From contig RBZT01000855.1 in NCBI GenBank assembly GCA_003693705.1, positions 1-64,000 of the forward strand: a stretch of DNA of 64,000 bases. Reading direction: 5' to 3'. Under the pieces are notes generated by a model. The model was given only the letters and a program-made list of their open reading frames with translations, was not told where the DNA came from and ran no database searches. Within the stretch, counting starts at the first letter, position 1. Each line of letters begins with the position of its first letter. This document shows positions 1-19,295 of this stretch, in pieces. The stretch is from Polymyxa betae A26-41 (Eukaryota > Protista > Endomyxa: Phytomyxea). The translations under genes were made by a program, and so were the position numbers.

Positions 1-581
1 CCTTTTGGATCCTCCTATTCGTCTTCTGGATCTTATCTACCGAATAATGCTCAATCTGGACAGTCATCTTATTCGGGATCTTCTAACAATCGTTTCCGTT
101 GAGCTTCACATTTCATGAATTCATCTGTATATCTCTCCACATCATTTGTTGTCTAATAAACATTTTGATTTGCACATTCTGAGTACACGCCTTTCATTAC
201 TAAATTCAGAGAGAAACGGCGAACGTTATGGTGAACATTCAATCTTGCTATCTCATAGATCAGAATGTTGTAAGAAGATTAACTTTATGATCAATATAGA
301 GCAGAGTGAGGTTGAGAACTTCCCATACAGCAAACATCAACTAAGTTTCTCAGTGATTATGATAGAATCGCTGTATGATCATTCAGTTGCATCGCGACAT
401 GTTGAATAGTGAAAGCTGTGGTAGGGTTAGGGTTTTATGCAATGTACGCACAAGGAACAAATTAATTTAACAAAGTAAGTCGGATGGGAGGTCAAGCCCT
501 CACGCGGGCTGTTCAAGTGCGTTCAGTTCACGAACCATAGTTTAATCCTGATCGTTAATCGTTATTAACAGCAGAGCACAC

Positions 582-3500
582 ATGTTCTCGGAAACGAAGC
601 AGCGCGAACTGCTCCCGAAATCGGTTCGCCCGATACATTATGAGCTGACGTTGACGCCGGATTTGAATGGCTGTACCTTTGACGGAATCTGCTCGGTTGA
701 AGTTGAGATCGTCGAGTCCACGACAACTGTGGTGGTCAACGCTCGTGAGCTGACGATCAAATCTGTCGAGATTAGCCACAAGGTTCCCGTTGTGTCAGTA
801 GATCTAAATACTTCTAATGATTGGCTGACTGTCGTTTTCTCTAATGAACTTCCGAAAGGAAAAGCAACGATGTTAGTTGTAAATGTCTAGCGTCTACTGT
901 TTGGATTTGAGTGTCTTTTAGAGTATTCAACTACTCTGGTATCCTCAACGATAAAATGGCTGGATTCTACGCCAGCAAATATGAGCGGGATGGGGTCCAA
1001 AAGACGATGGCTGTTACTCAATTCGAGGTTTCCCGATAATTTTGATATTGGTTTGCTTTCATGAAATTCTCCCATCTAGGCCTGTGATTGTCGACGAGCG
1101 CTACCCTGCTGGGATGAGCCAGCTGTAAAAGCCACGTTTGGTGTCACGCTCGTTGTTGATGAGGTTCCCGAATACATCGTCATTTCTGGTATAGCTTCTC
1201 AGGCTGCAATAGGCGCTGACTGCTGTTAGCAACATGCCAGAGAAGCAGTGTACCGCTCTTGGCAAAGGCTTAGTCAAACGTCAATATGATCGCACACCAA
1301 TTATGTCCACATATTTGCTGGCGTTCATCGTTGGAGAATTCGATTATTGTGAAACAGTACACAGCATTATTAGTGTATCCCCTTCGTTAAAGGGTTTATC
1401 AGGTCTCTAAAGATGGCGTTACAATTCGTGTTTTCACCCCGGTTGGTGCTCGGGTTCAAGGCCAGTTTGCGCTCGATGTTGCTGTCAAAACGTTGGACTT
1501 TTACAACAGATACTTCGAGATCAAATACCCGCTGCCCAAAGTTCATATTCGCTGCTGTCAACTTCTTGATAACTAACGATTTGTGTAGCTTGACCTTCTC
1601 GCTATTCCAGATTTTGCCTCGGGTGCAATGGAAAAGGTTTGATTGTTATAATGCCTGGTGTGAGTTGTTGACTAGTTCTTATAGTAGGAATGCGCTGCAG
1701 TGCCATTTGTTTGGCTTTTCTGACCTTTGATAGTTGGGGATGCGTCACATATCGCTCAACTGCACTTCTTGTCGATCCGCAAAAGTCATCAGCATCGACC
1801 AAGCAGTACGTCGCGCTGGTTGTCGCTCACGAGTTAGCACACCAGTGGTTCGGAAATGTAATCATGCTGCTGTGTTATTGCCATCAGGCTAATATTTTGC
1901 AGTTGGTCACGATGGAATGGTGGACCGACCTTTGGCTCAATGGTACGTGCAGCTCAAACGTACGTCGTCCTTACGTATGATCAGAGGGTTTTGCGTCCTG
2001 GGTGGAATACCTTGCCGTTGATCACCTTTTTCCCGAATGGAGAATGTAACGTATTGTTTTCCAATAGCTTATTATTTACTGATTCTGATTCAGGTGGACC
2101 CAGTTCGTTTCGCAGGTATCACTGACGCAAAGTGAGTTCATTCTGCTTAAGATCTCGTAGGACTTCGGTAGCGCTTTGTCATTGGATGCCCTGCAAAACT
2201 CGCATCCCGTTGAAGTTCCAGTTCATAAAGCAGCCGAAGGTTCAGTTATTTACTATGTAACATTTCTTGTTAACCCTTCTGATAGTTGACGAAATCTTCG
2301 ACAATATCAGCTATTCCAAAGGTGAGTGCTGAACTGCTGATAAATGGCTTAGTCATTTGTATATTCGTGTCAGGTGGATCTGTCATTCGAATGCTCGTAA
2401 GCTATATGGGCGAAGAAGAATTTCGTAAAGGTATTTGTTTGTATGTTGAATTCAGTATCGTGAACCCGTATCAGGCATGGTTGTTTATCTAAATCGTCAT
2501 GCCTATGGCAATGCCAGCACCAACGATTTGTGGAACGCACTTGGGGAATCCAGCAAGAAACCGATTTCCGCTGTCATGGAAAAATGGACTCGCACGCAGG
2601 TGGTACTCTCAATCCGCTTACTAACTCTTTACTGATTTCGTTAGGGATTTCCTGTTGTTGCTGTTGATTACGATTCGGCAAATCCGTCCAACTTGCTTTT
2701 ACGACAAGATCGGTATGTGTTGCTTTCAGATTTCGTATCTTTGCTGATAATCTTAAAGATTCCTTGTAAGCGGCTTGTCTAAGGAATTTGCATCCCAAAT
2801 TTGGCCGATTCCGATTACTACCGTCACTGACATTTCAAAATCTTCGCCGATTGTGCTGTTTTCTGAGAAATCTCGTTAGCTGTCGTGAGAGGTGTTCTGG
2901 CTTCTATCTGACATCCCATATCAGAGTCGTTATCAATTGGTTCACAGAAAGCTTCGTTCATTAAATTGAATGCCGGCCAGTGCGGGGTCTATAGAGTCCT
3001 TTACTCTACTGCCATGTTTGAGAAAATCCAAAACGCTATCAAAACCGGGTTGCTTGCAGATCCAGCTGATAGGTAAGACTGATCTCATTTTTCACGAAAT
3101 TTACCATGAATCTGAACTTTCAGGCTCGGCATCCAGAACGACGCGATTGCGCTCTCGCGAGCTGGTCTGTTGAAAACTCATCAAGTTCTGCAGTTATTGC
3201 TGTCTTATATGAAAGAATCCAACTATACTGTCTGGAGCGATATCATGGTCCACACTGTGAGCGACGTCAAAGGGTTTGTTGTTCAGGCTGTCTTCAATCC
3301 CGATTCCAATATTCTTGTTGCAGATTGTTAATGATACATGATGACCTGTACAACCGTTTCAAAAAATTCATCCAAGAATTGCTGGAGCCGGTAGTTACCT
3401 CAATCGGCTGGGAACCAAAACCTTCCGACGATCATCTCACAGCTATGCTTCGCAGCCTTGTGATCCCCAAAATCGGTTCAGTTCGCAGGATTTATTACTA

Positions 3501-4235
3501 CTCTTTGTTAAAGACAAGGTTTTAGGTATTAACGGGCATTCTGCCACGATTAATGAGGCTTGCAAACGTTTCGACGCCTTCGTTGCTTCCGGATTCCAAA
3601 GCGGTTTGGTCCCCGATCTAAGAAGCGGTGTTTATAGCATCGCTTTAGCGAACCGAGGTGCAAGCGTCTACAATGTTTTGATCGATTTTTACCGAAAAAC
3701 TACTCATCAAGAAGAGAAGGTTTGCGATGGTTGTCCACAGCTTGGCGAACGTCTAACTGACTGCCAGGTCCGAATTTTGTCTTCGCTTGGAAGTGCTCAA
3801 GACTCTGCCTTGCTTCAAAAGGCTCTAGATTTCTGCTTTACTTCTGATGTTCGCAAGCAGGATATCATGTACATAATTCGTAGTGTCTCAGCTAATCCCA
3901 AAGGTGTCAAGCTCGCTTGGCTGTGGCTCAAGAATAATTACCAAAAGATCTGCGACGAATTCGGGTCCGGCCCAACGTTCAGTAGACTGATCTCGTACGC
4001 GACCAATAATTTCACCACCAGAGGAATGGCCAGTGAGGTTAAATGATCGGTCTCGTAGACTTGTAAACATATTCATTGAGTGATTCGTCAGATCTCGAAT
4101 TTCTTCTGCGCACACGCCCATGTTGGCGCTGAACGTACTGTCAAGCAGAGTTTAGAGCAGATCGAATCGATGGCATCCTGGTTGGACCGTGATCAGGCTT
4201 CCCTCCAGGATTGGCTTTATTCTCACTACCATTAA
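582..4235 (+). CDS. NPEPPS: M1 family zinc aminopeptidase (puromycin-sensitive aminopeptidase-like), many introns
   Basis: Manual splicing gives [74 protein letters not shown] (HExxH-x18-E), [12 protein letters not shown] and an ERAP1-like C-terminus. Stop TAA at 4233-4235. Confidence 0.95.
1636..1733 (+). other. Nested [D1,2] twin intron (stwintron): internal intron 1637-1684 splits the GT donor of the external intron (G1636 + 1685-1733)
   Basis: The exon must end at 1635 (GAA AA) and resume at 1734 (T TGG GGA) to give GAMENWG. The gap begins GG. Removing GTTTG...TTGAC...TTATAG (48 nt) creates G|TAGGAA...CTGAC...GATAG (50 nt). Confidence 0.85.
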
Positions 4236-4434
4236 TACAAACGCCTTTTACTGGCGGGACAATACGTAACAAAAGGATCTGACTTGTCATGTTAAATAAA
4301 AAAAGTTGCGTCATGTATCGTATTCTGTCATTTCTGTTTATCTGGCATGTCCTTAATTCCAGGACAATTCGTGTGTCATTGGCCAGCATTGGTCTCGTGT
4401 ATCTATCAGCCAGCATTGAGAGCGATTGGGGCTG

Positions 4435-7400
4435 ATGGGAAACCAGCTGGGGATCGGGCAGACAGTTAGCTCATTGCACGATCTGCCCTTGTTCCTATCG
4501 GAACTTTCGCCCTTCTTGCAATTTCGCCGAAACCTTGGTGGTGGGAAGGTTCTTTGAAAACAGCTTCCCATCCAGCATTACTTATATTTTAATAGGTGCT
4601 GAAAACTGTCGAATGCGGTTTCGGGCAGGCCCTGGTTGTGGTTAAAATATACATTAGACGGGACCCTTCGCTTTCAGCGTTAAAATCGTATTCGACTGAA
4701 CTGGAGCGAATCTCTTCTGGCCTGCAATCGTCACCATGTCTGCTTCCATATTCGTCATGGCATGTTTCTCCCCGTGCTGTCTTCTTGGTTCGTCCGTTCA
4801 TCGCCAGCAACCTACACGATCGATTTCATATGCGGCCCTTCTTGACAGAGACCGAGAAGGTGGCTTGTTTCTTTGGTTGGTAGCTCGAAACATCTAATTT
4901 AGATTTTGGAAGATTTGGATTATCTACTGTATACTGCGAGGATTGCAGGCGCTTCATGAAGCTGAGATCTGCCATTCCGATTTAAAGACAGAAAGTACAA
5001 GCACTTCCTCATCAAATTATCTACAATTAATTTCCGAGTTTAGATATCTTGTTGAACTCCTTTCAATGGGTTATAATTTCAGATATCAATGCGTTTTTCA
5101 AACCGACTCTTCTTCCGGATGATAATCCGTACGATTTCCACACGTTTTTCGAATCGCGTCGCGATCGGTCGCTTCGAAAACGATGCTATGTCGCTCCTGA
5201 AAGGTAAACAATAGAATAGATTTTAGCAGAAGCATTGGTTCGCTTTAAGGACACAAGTTGAGGTTGCACTTTAAAAGCTACTTTACTAATATCGACATAG
5301 GTTTTATGATTCGTCGTTCTCAACGACAATTGATGGCGAGGCGTTACGGCCATCGATGGATATGTTCTCGTTTGGTTGCGTCGTGGCTGAAGTGTTTCTG
5401 GAAGGCGAGGCTCTGGTTAAGCATTGGTTTTCTCCTAAATTTCACATTTGACACGTTCTCTACAGTTTGACCTGCCCCATTTATTATCGTTCAAATCCGG
5501 TCGTTACGACCCAGAACCAATCATTCAAAAAATCGCATACGCTCAAGTTCACGATTTAATTCGACAATGTATCCAGCTGGAGCCAACCAAGCGACCGAGT
5601 GCCGCTCAATGTTTAAAGGCATTCGAAGGTTTTTCTTTTTATTCTGGAGCGTGGCTTTTTGAATTCACAATCTATCTCTGCAGGCTCACTATTTCCGGAA
5701 TCGTTCACGAAGGTGTATGATGTGCTGAGCACCGTGATGAGTGACAGCGTCGACTCGCTGGACACTCGGCTGCAGATTGTTCGCAACAGTTTCACTTCGT
5801 TAATGGAGAGCATCAGTGACAACCCGCGAGCTCAAAAGTTAATGAAAGTATCAGCCGAAGAAGCAACATTGCTTCATGCCGGTATTTTGACATTTCGTTA
5901 TACTTCTGTCATTGAGTTTACAAGATGTTGTTTCACATAGAAGTGAAGTCTGCCAAGCACGATTGTCGAGTTTCTAAAGAAATTTTTGCTTATGACAATC
6001 TGATCGAAACGCTTTCCTTATTGAAAGCTAATCAGTCCGAGGATAACCCGAGTAGGCTTTCTGATGATAAAAGTTTTCACCGAAAGGAGCACGATCTTGA
6101 GGGTGTGTCTGTGCAGCCCCTCGAACAACACTTGAATCAATCGACGACCGAATCCACGTTGCCTCTAATCATGTTCGGTTAGTAGCCGCTGTTATCATGG
6201 TTTGCTGTCCCTAATGGCTAATCAGTCTGTTGCTGTATTCGAAATCTGACGCAATCGGATTCGAAAATACTGGCCCTGGATATGCTATTATCATTGGCGT
6301 ATGCAACATCGGACAGCATCCGTTTGAATCGTATTCTGCCCTATGTAGTGGCTTGTCTATCAGATCCGGCGTATGACCGAACATATCGTTTATCTGTCGA
6401 TCCGCTCATGTTCTCCGTCAGGCCATTAGTCCGGGCTGAAGCGATTTCGGTCCTGACCACGCTCGTCGTACTGGTCCAGTATATCACGGCTGCCGATAGA
6501 CATATCTGGGCTGAGTACAATTACAAACGGCATGATATTGTTTTGCTTATTTGATTGTCTAGTTACATCTTTCCTTCAATGAACAACATTCCAAATGATT
6601 CTGAAGAGTTCGTCAAAATCAGTTTCGCACAGGTCCCATACCGGCAATTCGGGCTTTGCATTGGATTTTTGAAATGGCATGCTGGCAGAATATCGCTCGT
6701 CTTGCAGATGCGTCGCGTCGGTTTCTGGACTGCGCTCGATTTGCGGAGACGACTGTTGAATCGTCGCCGACTGCCCTCGACACGTATGAGAGCGAACTCG
6801 AAGTAAACTCTAAACCCTAACCTCTCACCATTCATTGAGCCAAAAACTATAGGTCCTGCAGAATGCGGTTTGTCGTTTAGTTGGCGATACGTTAGCGAGT
6901 TCTGGGAGCTCGGTGAAGGTGGCGATGCTGTCGGATATCGCGCGGCTTGGTATTTTCTTAGGACGTGATCGATGCAATAGCTGGCTGCTGCCAATGCTTA
7001 TTACTGTTCTCAACGATCGTGATTGGCAGCTTCGAAATGGTTCGACTGCGTTTTTTTCATTACCCTCTCTTGCGCGCGCTTTGATTTTTATCGCTGAATT
7101 TCGTGCTGACATTTGCTAAGCTTTCTTCAAAAATGTAATCGGCATCTCTGTATTTGTTGGTCGAATTGCTTTCCAGAATTTCCTGCTGCCCTGTATAGAA
7201 CAGGCTCTATTCGATGTCGAAGAGACTGTTATCGTTAGTGCTCTGCAGGCATTGATCGCCCAAGTCGAAATCGGTATTTGCATGTTCCCGGCTGTGCCAG
7301 CGCAAGCCCGCTTCGTACTCAGGCTGCCATATAGGCTTATTCGAACATTCCGTTGGCATCAATGTGACGACTCGAATTGCCCCGTTATTATGTCATCCGT

Positions 7401-17532: not shown

Positions 17533-19295
17533 ATGGCTCGAGGAGAGACCGTTGTCCAAAACGTCCCATTGAAAGCAGCTGACCCTGCCGTTTATGAAAT
17601 TCTTCAGAAAGAAATGCGACGCCAGTATGAAGGCCTGGAACTGATTGCTTCTGAGGTTACTTTAACATACCCCTTTGTTATGCATAATGTGATCTAAATT
17701 AGAACTTCACCTCGCAAGCTGTTATGGAAGCCTGTGGAAGTGCCTTCACCAACAAGTATTCCGAAGGATTGCCTGGTGCTCGCTATTGTATGCTGTGAAT
17801 CAGATGTCATCATTGTCTGACAACGGTTGAATCAGACGGAGGGAATGAATACATCGACGAATTAGAAATTCTGACTCAGAAGCGGGCGTTGGAAGCATTT
17901 AATCTTGACCCATCAGAATGGGGTGTCAATGTCCAACCTTACTCTGGATCGACTGCCAATTTCGCGGCCATGACCGCTGTGCTTCAACCCAACGACCGGT
18001 ATGCTGTTATTCCGAACCTTCATATGTGTCCATGACAATCGCTAAGCTTGATGGGCCTGGATCTGCCTTCTGGAGGCCATCTCTCTCATGGGTTCTACCG
18101 AGGTCACCGAAAAGTCAACTGTTCTGCAATCTACTTCCAATCTCTCCCATACAAGGCAAACAGTCTGCAAATTGTTTTCAGATGATTCCTAAATAATTGG
18201 TCATAGGTCAATTTTAAAACTGGTTTGATCGATTACGATGCCTTAGAAGAGACAGCTGCTGTATTTAGTCCCAACCTGATCGTAGCCGGAGGCAGTGCCT
18301 ATCCTCGAGAATGGGACTATAGCCGCATGCGTTCTATTGCCGATAAGAACAAGGCTCTGTTGTTAACTGACATGGCCCATATCAGTGGATTGGCTAGTTA
18401 CTTTAGCTCACGCTTTATTGTCACTGACATTGCAAAGTACAGGTTGCTGCTGGGGTAGTCGATACACCCTTTCGGGACTCCCATATCGTTACTACCACTA
18501 CTCATAAGAGTTTAAGAGGACCTCGTGCTGCCTTGATCTTTTACCGAAAAGATAACGAATTTGTAATGGCGATTCCTTTGTTTACTGAAGTTCCCTGAGT
18601 TGATTGGCAGAATCTTGAACGCCGTATTAACGCTGCTGTTTTCCCTGGGTGCCAAGGCGGTCCACACAACCATGCGATTGCTGGTGTCTGCGTCCAGCTA
18701 GATGAAGTCAATACACCTGATTTTAAGGCCTATGCAGCCCAAGTACTGAATCTCCACTGTTATTTCCCTGCACTTTCTAAGTTGTCCTAGGTCGTAGCAA
18801 ACGCAAGAGCCATGGCGAACTCGTTAACTAAGCTTGGCTATTCCATCGTTTCTGGCGGGACTGACAATCACCTGTTGCTTTGGGATGTTCGTCCTCTCGG
18901 TTTGACAGGAAGCAAAATCGAACATTTGTGTGATTTAGTTGGAATCACTCTAAACAAAAACAGGTGTGTTATTCTCAGGTTCCATCAAATCGTCAATAAC
19001 TGTTGATAGCGTGTTTGGTGACGCTTCTGCAATGTCGCCTGGAGGTGTTCGTATCGGAACGCCCGCTTTGACCTCTCGCGGTCTTGTGGAATCCGATTTT
19101 GTAGTCATTGTGGAGTTTTTGGACAAAGTTGTTAAGCTGTGCTTGAAAATCCAGGATGCTGCAGGCACCAAAACTTTGGCTGACTTTAAAGATGGAGTGA
19201 AGTTTGAATTAAAAGCAATCGAGGCTCTTCATGACGATGTCAAGAATTTCGCAAGATCGTTCCCCATGAAAGGTTTCAATGCTGAAGATTTGTAG
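17533..19295 (+). CDS. SHMT: Serine hydroxymethyltransferase
   Basis: [58 protein letters not shown] (PLP lysine), [29 protein letters not shown]. Confidence 0.97.

What the first reader, a model, noticed from the sequence alone, without database searches (positions are those of the whole stretch)
1636..1733. Intron-within-an-intron ([D1,2] stwintron) gating the GAMEN motif of an M1 aminopeptidase
Seen: rebuilding the conserved GAMENWG motif needs the exon to end at 1635 (ATG GAA AA) and resume at 1734 (T TGG GGA TGC). That 98-nt gap starts GG, not GT, and is about twice the usual intron length here. It resolves exactly into two normal introns. The internal one is 1637-1684 (48 nt, GTTTGA...TTGAC...TTATAG). 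Its removal joins G1636 to T1685 and creates the donor GTAGGA of a 50-nt external intron with branch CTGAC and acceptor GATAG. Known: this ordered two-step architecture is the [D1,2] spliceosomal twin intron described in ascomycete fungi. Inference: I know of no report in a non-fungal protist like this one, so it would point to nested U2 splicing in another lineage, placed on an essential substrate-binding motif. A rival in-frame route (AG at 1675, 8-nt micro-exon 1676-1683, GT at 1684) gives GAMEKFLYWG and would break the motif. It could be an off-isoform.
Basis: partly seen in the sequence, partly recalled or inferred. Interest (0 to 1): 0.92.

Follow-up and report, generated by a model that had tools for sequence, protein, structure and literature searches.

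The report
Intron-inside-intron shared by root parasites
A housekeeping peptidase gene of two plant-root parasites (Polymyxa betae and the clubroot agent Plasmodiophora brassicae) holds one small intron inside the start signal of another, so it very probably has to be spliced in two ordered steps, an arrangement I found described only in fungi.

Summary
Confirmed and extended. The window is Polymyxa betae (Rhizaria). A DNA contig confirms the GG at 1636-1637. Spliced contigs from three studies join 1635^1734 exactly (98 nt, GG..AG), restoring GAMENWG; their lengths exclude the micro-exon route as the main form. The other 20 introns are GT-AG, 42-54 nt. The gap splits into a 48-nt internal intron (94th percentile of predicted introns) and a 50-nt external one (simulated chance about 0.3%). 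New: the syntenic Plasmodiophora brassicae orthologue (PBRA_005790, 63% identical) has the same layout at the same base (56 + 48 nt, rebuilt donor GTCAGT) with unrelated sequence, and all three public models of it break GAMEN. Two distant eukaryote homologues carry a plain intron at this position, so the internal intron probably entered an old host intron. Best reading: a [D1,2] stwintron (about 0.9). The splicing intermediate was not seen; contigs cannot show it. No evidence for regulatory 'gating', sister copies or a large class (none other in 265 kb). No non-fungal report in the library searched; the scan had not noted one before.

The parts
582..4235 (+). Puromycin-sensitive-aminopeptidase-like M1 peptidase gene, 864 aa, 20 ordinary introns plus the twin intron
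1589..1635 (+). 47-nt exon ending in ATG GAA AA (GAME plus two bases of the Asn codon)
   Evidence: joints 1540^1589 and 1635^1734
1636..1636 (+). G1 of the split donor of the external intron
   Evidence: absent from mRNA contigs, present in DNA contig; same G in P. brassicae
1637..1684 (+). Internal intron, 48 nt, donor GTTTGA, likely branch TTGAC 1668-1672, acceptor TAG
   Evidence: picked as an intron by a gene finder with no twin-intron state; 94th percentile of 462 predicted introns; branch point inferred from motif only
1685..1733 (+). Rest of the external intron; with G1636 it forms a 50-nt intron, donor GTAGGA, likely branch CTGAC 1720-1724, acceptor TAG
   Evidence: 58th percentile; acceptor 1733 used in mRNA contigs; rebuilt donor matches 7 of 11 U1 positions against 4 for the GG site
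1734..1857 (+). 124-nt exon: last base of the Asn codon, WG, and the zinc-binding HELAH motif (1828-1842)
   Evidence: joints; PF01433 E 1.5e-15

Best explanation
A [D1,2] spliceosomal twin intron. P. betae defines introns as units of about 42-56 nt. The spliceosome first removes 1637-1684, which joins G1636 to T1685 and creates the donor GTAGGA; it then removes the new 50-nt intron, joining 1635 to 1734 and completing the Asn codon of GAMEN. Shown: the start sequence, the end product, the quality of both constituent introns, and the same layout in P. brassicae. Inferred: the order of the two reactions, the branch points, and the origin, namely that a second intron appeared between G1 and U2 of an older plain intron before Polymyxa and Plasmodiophora split. 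It is probably kept because either half can only be lost precisely, not because it regulates the gene.
For: Mature junction GG..AG in three studies. Double length against 20 confirmed introns of 42-54 nt. Two-step parse scores 14.0 nats against 1.8 for a one-step 98-nt intron even with no GG penalty; simulated p 0.003. A gene finder given a [D1,2] state calls only this site in 265 kb. P. brassicae orthologue: 104-nt gap at the same base, G + 56-nt intron + T.., external 48 nt with donor GTCAGT; chance of such a split with a branch motif 1.4%; no sequence likeness between the species (shuffle p 0.24 and 0.76); three strain SNPs all lie inside the internal intron, none at a splice signal; no conventional GT/GC-AG route gives GAMENWG in either species. 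Plain GT-AG intron at the identical base in L017 (80 nt) and L021 (65 nt).
Against: The intermediate was not seen; only assembled contigs were available. The P. brassicae mature junction is inferred from motif conservation, not read from RNA. The P. brassicae internal intron scores only 1.0 under the P. betae model, although its donor GTACGC and branch CTAAC are good and the model was trained on another species. Intron scores come from my own self-trained model, unvalidated beyond this gene, whose 20 introns seeded it.
Confidence: 0.9

Rival explanations
1. One-step splicing of a 98-nt intron from a non-canonical GG donor at 1636; the internal signals are incidental.
For: Gives the same mRNA, so cannot exclude it. 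GG donors exist (PMC5714493). GT-AG introns of 85-115 nt are predicted in this genome. An unchecked scan note mentions a possible GG-AG intron elsewhere in it (s1-684964).
Against: Copepod GA/GG donors have an obligate exonic AG and nearly always A at +3; here the exon ends AA and +3 is T in both species. Normal-length GG donors are called no more often than GA, CT or AT decoys in 265 kb (4 against 2, 5, 10). It needs two rarities at once and leaves the internal YAG|T, branch motif and two normal lengths unexplained in two species with unrelated sequence (1.8% and 1.4% by chance).
Confidence: 0.07
2. The two-step path is real and is kept as a regulatory switch: alternative routes (micro-exon form GAMEKFLYWG, one-step +1 frameshift, stalled intermediate with a stop at the junction) turn the enzyme off.
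For: The micro-exon route is in frame in P. betae. The intermediate reads AAG TAG (stop); the one-step product stops at codon 325. A latent donor at G1684 competes in the pre-mRNA.
Against: All three mRNA contigs show only the clean product. The micro-exon route needs a 39-nt intron scoring at the 18th percentile and has no counterpart in P. brassicae. Mis-splicing is an ordinary by-product of fungal stwintrons (PMC12403724).
Confidence: 0.08
3. Assembly error: one G too many, ordinary 97-nt GT-AG intron.
For: The DNA run laid (X2) may be the assembly's source sample.
Against: X2 is identical across the gene; two DNA runs of two studies hold 1.00 of sampled words; four P. brassicae assemblies have GG at the same place.
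Confidence: 0.005

Closest known systems
[D1,2] stwintrons of Ascomycota (PMC12403724, PMC9024468, PMC5639578)
   Same: Internal GT-AG intron between G1 and U2 of the external donor; product looks like a GG-AG intron; both parts of normal size; position kept between related species without sequence likeness; sits where other taxa have a plain intron, as in lipS.
   Different: Host is a rhizarian protist with much weaker donor and branch consensus; intermediate not yet demonstrated; none other in a 1% genome sample, against more than 100 in Hypoxylon sp. CO27-5.
Sister (repeated) stwintrons with near-terminal inverted repeats, Xylariales (PMC12403724)
   Same: [D1,2] layout.
   Different: No second copy in the genome, no unusual fold (z -0.5), old position.
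Alternatively spliced [D1,2]/[A2,3] stwintron (PMC5587772)
   Same: The two introns overlap in one G (1684), which offers a latent donor.
   Different: The [A2,3] route needs a G after the last AG; base 1734 is T in both species, so only the [D1,2] order works.
GA/GG donors of the copepod Eurytemora affinis (PMC5714493)
   Same: Junction reads GG..AG.
   Different: Those have exonic AG and +3 A and, with GA donors, make up about 12% of introns there; this site has neither, and GG donors show no excess here.
Recursive splicing and nested introns of animals
   Same: An intervening sequence removed in successive steps.
   Different: There no splice signal of one intron is interrupted by another (definition in PMC5587772), and the ends are GT-AG.

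Membership tests
[D1,2] stwintron | Canonical internal intron starting at base 2 of the intervening sequence | tested here: met
   1637-1684, GT..TAG, 48 nt, 94th percentile; 56 nt in P. brassicae
[D1,2] stwintron | Its removal rebuilds a canonical external intron (G1|U2 donor, branch motif, acceptor) | tested here: met
   GTAGGA..CTGAC..TAG, 50 nt, 58th percentile; GTCAGT..CAG, 48 nt in P. brassicae; tested on sequence only
[D1,2] stwintron | Mature mRNA lacks the whole sequence including G1 | tested here: met
   1635^1734 in three studies, lengths exact; P. betae only
[D1,2] stwintron | No conventional route yields the same mRNA | tested here: met
   Enumeration of one- and two-intron GT/GC-AG routes in both species
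[D1,2] stwintron | Splicing intermediate lacking only the internal intron is detectable | not testable with these tools
   The runs shown to hold the gene are kept as contigs, which drop rare forms; the one read-laying run is spent
Sister (repeated) stwintron | Sequence-similar copies at other loci | tested here: not met
   Only the self match in the genome
Sister (repeated) stwintron | Terminal inverted repeats or internal symmetry | tested here: not met
   Fold no better than shuffles; halves alike only at p 0.06-0.09
[D1,2]/[A2,3] alternatively spliced stwintron | G immediately after the last AG | tested here: not met
   1734 is T; also T in P. brassicae
One-step GG-AG intron (Eurytemora type) | Exon ends in AG and intron +3 is A | tested here: not met
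   AA|GGT in both species (rule)
M1 aminopeptidase, PSA-like | GXMEN and HEXXH motifs, N-terminal and ERAP1_C domains | tested here: met
   enzyme activity not tested

The most novel reading that the evidence does not exclude
Donor-splitting twin introns are not a fungal peculiarity but arise wherever tiny introns are recognised by intron definition; this conserved case is the first visible member of an overlooked class of tens to a few hundred per plasmodiophorid genome that aligners and gene finders silently mis-model, some of them kept as order-dependent splicing switches.
Probability: 0.3. Interest if true: 0.8.

Novelty: new member of a known kind. Interest (0 to 1): 0.66.

Why it matters
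It would move stwintrons from one fungal phylum to the other side of the eukaryote tree, most simply by independent origin, and give direct evidence of intron definition in Rhizaria (in fungi, stwintrons provided that evidence; PMC5587772). It offers an intron-gain event inside an older intron that can be dated across plasmodiophorids. It warns that some GG-AG junctions counted as non-canonical donors may be two ordinary introns. Practically, it explains why three public P. brassicae protein models (CEO97676.1, XXQ35465.1, SPQ98222.1) lack an intact GAMEN motif. It is the same mechanism as in fungi, not a new one.

Tried and rejected
Rejected: assembly error; micro-exon as main product; [A2,3] alternative; repeated or introner-like origin; tandem duplication of one intron (halves not significantly alike). 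Led nowhere: homologue search with the 146-aa C-terminal frame (blank means nothing given the length filter); short-fragment search returned mostly animal-type fragments; the one fetched has its intron at the G of GAMEN, not at N; strict-consensus pattern over the genome gave 6 matches against 14 for the control, and those inspected looked like ordinary introns or repeats, but that pattern would miss this site too; a 96-nt intron in L032 splits well but the [D1,2] route breaks the frame; no genomic DNA for the third relative P0288; L006, a close unnamed relative, covers only the 3' end. Limits observed: the joined protein model was used only inside scripts and sent to no search tool; exons were searched by reference.

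Full report
Identity. The window is the start of contig C613 of a 27,085,814-base assembly in 1001 contigs. That matches the Polymyxa betae draft (1,001 contigs, 27,085,946 bp; PMC6328671), a plasmodiophorid (Rhizaria). The gene at 582-4235 is a PSA-like M1 aminopeptidase.

Observation. The contig of DNA run X2 covers 540-4320 without a difference, so the GG is in the genome, with the caveat that X2 may be the source sample. Contigs of X3, X4 and X12, from three studies, are spliced (one ends in poly-A, one carries three SNPs) and all join 1635 to 1734 with ends GG..AG and no ambiguity. The tool marked the letters between as 'not known', so I checked lengths: 2701, 2719 and 2643 equal the clean product exactly, while the micro-exon route gives +9, a one-step GT1637..AG1733 cut +1 and the intermediate +50 (15 joints were listed by the tool, the rest I placed from contig pieces and sequence). 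The clean product is an open frame of 864 aa with GAMENWG. The other 20 introns are all GT-AG and 42-54 nt, mean 48.

Is the split more than chance? An internal YAG|T that leaves two normal-sized parts occurs in 9-12% of simulated gaps, with a branch motif in 1.8%. I self-trained a gene finder on the 265 kb of this genome that I held. Without a twin-intron state it already takes 1637-1684 as an intron and splits the gene. The internal intron scores at the 94th percentile of 462 predicted introns, the external at the 58th, and a one-step 98-nt intron at the 8th even when GG is scored as GT. Given a [D1,2] state, it calls this site and no other. Decoy states (wrong first base or wrong base after the internal AG) give 4-16 calls at a lenient prior and 0-2 at a strict one. 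Long introns simulated from the model reach the observed combined score in 0.3% of cases. This model is my own, seeded on this gene's ordinary introns, so the numbers are a guide.

Orthologue. A C-terminal fragment hit led to locus L051, an intron-rich M1 peptidase gene beside the Vps15/PIK3R4 gene, as in the window. Its clusters hold Plasmodiophora brassicae proteins, including PBRA_005790. The protein is 63% identical and 17 other intron positions are shared. At the same base of the Asn codon it has a 104-nt gap (L051 3720-3823): G, a 56-nt intron (GTACGC, branch motif CTAAC, TAG), then T and the rest of a 48-nt intron with the rebuilt donor GTCAGT. Neither half resembles its P. betae counterpart (shuffle p 0.24 and 0.76). 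Such a split with a branch motif arises by chance in 1.4%. Four assemblies give two haplotypes; the three SNPs lie inside the internal intron and spare the signals. No conventional one- or two-intron route gives GAMENWG in either species, and the P. betae micro-exon route has no P. brassicae counterpart. All three public P. brassicae models break the motif: two read GAMEKVR.., and SPQ98222.1 uses exactly the internal intron and then improvises. Two unnamed relatives, P0288 (71% identical to the P. betae protein, source not named) and P0289 (an intronless contig), read GAMENWG. The P. brassicae junction itself was not read from RNA.

Origin. A metagenome pattern scan for an intron at this exact base gave 8 matches, two of them M1 peptidase genes with a plain GT-AG intron there: L017 (80 nt) and L021 (65 nt). 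L021 falls nearest clusters dominated by Ascomycota (a lead only); L017 is unassigned. Three animal-type loci and a glomeromycete gene lack an intron at this base. So the position is either old or gained more than once. The simplest history is that of the fungal lipS stwintron (PMC5639578): a new intron appeared in the donor of an older one, here before Polymyxa and Plasmodiophora separated. There is no sister copy, no terminal pairing beyond chance, and the halves are not significantly alike.

Mechanism and rivals. Two ordered U2 reactions explain every feature (about 0.9). Order matters: G1684 is a latent donor, and using it first would destroy the internal acceptor; the [A2,3] rescue of PMC5587772 is closed because 1734 is T. 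The main rival is direct use of a GG donor (about 0.07). It yields the same mRNA, but the site lacks the exonic AG and +3 A of known GG donors (PMC5714493), pairs worst with U1 (4 of 11 against 6 and 7; confirmed donors range 4-8, so this is weak evidence), and normal-length GG donors show no excess over decoys. The defining test, the intermediate, could not be run. I see no support for regulatory gating: only the clean product is in the contigs, although contigs hide minor forms.

Novelty. Twelve papers in the library hold the word stwintron. I read parts of five; the 2025 paper describes them as identified in ascomycete fungi, and searches for protist twintrons, nested introns and GG-AG introns turned up no spliceosomal case outside fungi in titles and abstracts. 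The library lacks most subscription journals, so 'first non-fungal' is probable, not proven. The scan's own notes hold no stwintron but list unchecked candidates for zero-length-exon intron pairs and a possible GG-AG intron in this genome. Frequency: none other among about 460 predicted introns, which leaves room for up to roughly 0.7% of introns. Verdict: a real feature, very probably a new member of a known kind in a new supergroup, conserved across two genera; interest 0.66.

Steps left out. The joined protein model was not sent to any search tool; exons were searched by reference.

Noticed in passing
window 2094-2115: 22-nt micro-exon between two ordinary introns, supported by the RNA contigs; the intron before it has no counterpart in the P. 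brassicae model.
   Followed up: partly
window 2240-2373 and L053 2170-2220, 3801-3857: Lineage-specific intron positions: P. betae has codon 379 phase 1 and 391 phase 1; P. brassicae has 376 phase 0 and 759 phase 0 (P. betae numbering).
   Followed up: no
window 18393-18442: GC-AG intron in the SHMT gene; its removal restores the conserved HISGLVAAG stretch. The intron at 17999-18046 of the same gene appears to end in the rarer AAG.
   Followed up: partly
window 5204-5300: Double-length (97 nt) GT-AG intron in the Vps15/PIK3R4 gene; direct joining fits the P. brassicae protein. It does not parse as [D1,2]; other nested or recursive parses were not tested.
   Followed up: partly
L032 minus strand 1601-1696 (G000:C8): 96-nt predicted intron in a TPR-type gene that divides into two well-scoring halves (6.0 and 6.1); the [D1,2] route breaks the frame, so another two-step route or a micro-exon is possible.
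   Followed up: partly
L051 8051-12195: The Vps15 gene neighbours the peptidase in both species but is tandem in P. betae and convergent in P. brassicae, a local inversion.
   Followed up: no
L006 1-999: Metagenome contig (JGI 3300001213) from an unnamed close relative, 61-66% identical over the 3' exons, with short introns at similar places.
   Followed up: partly
window 3606-4046: The 48-nt intron 3720-3767 is in frame and stop-free, so ab initio models read through it (881 aa instead of 864).
   Followed up: yes
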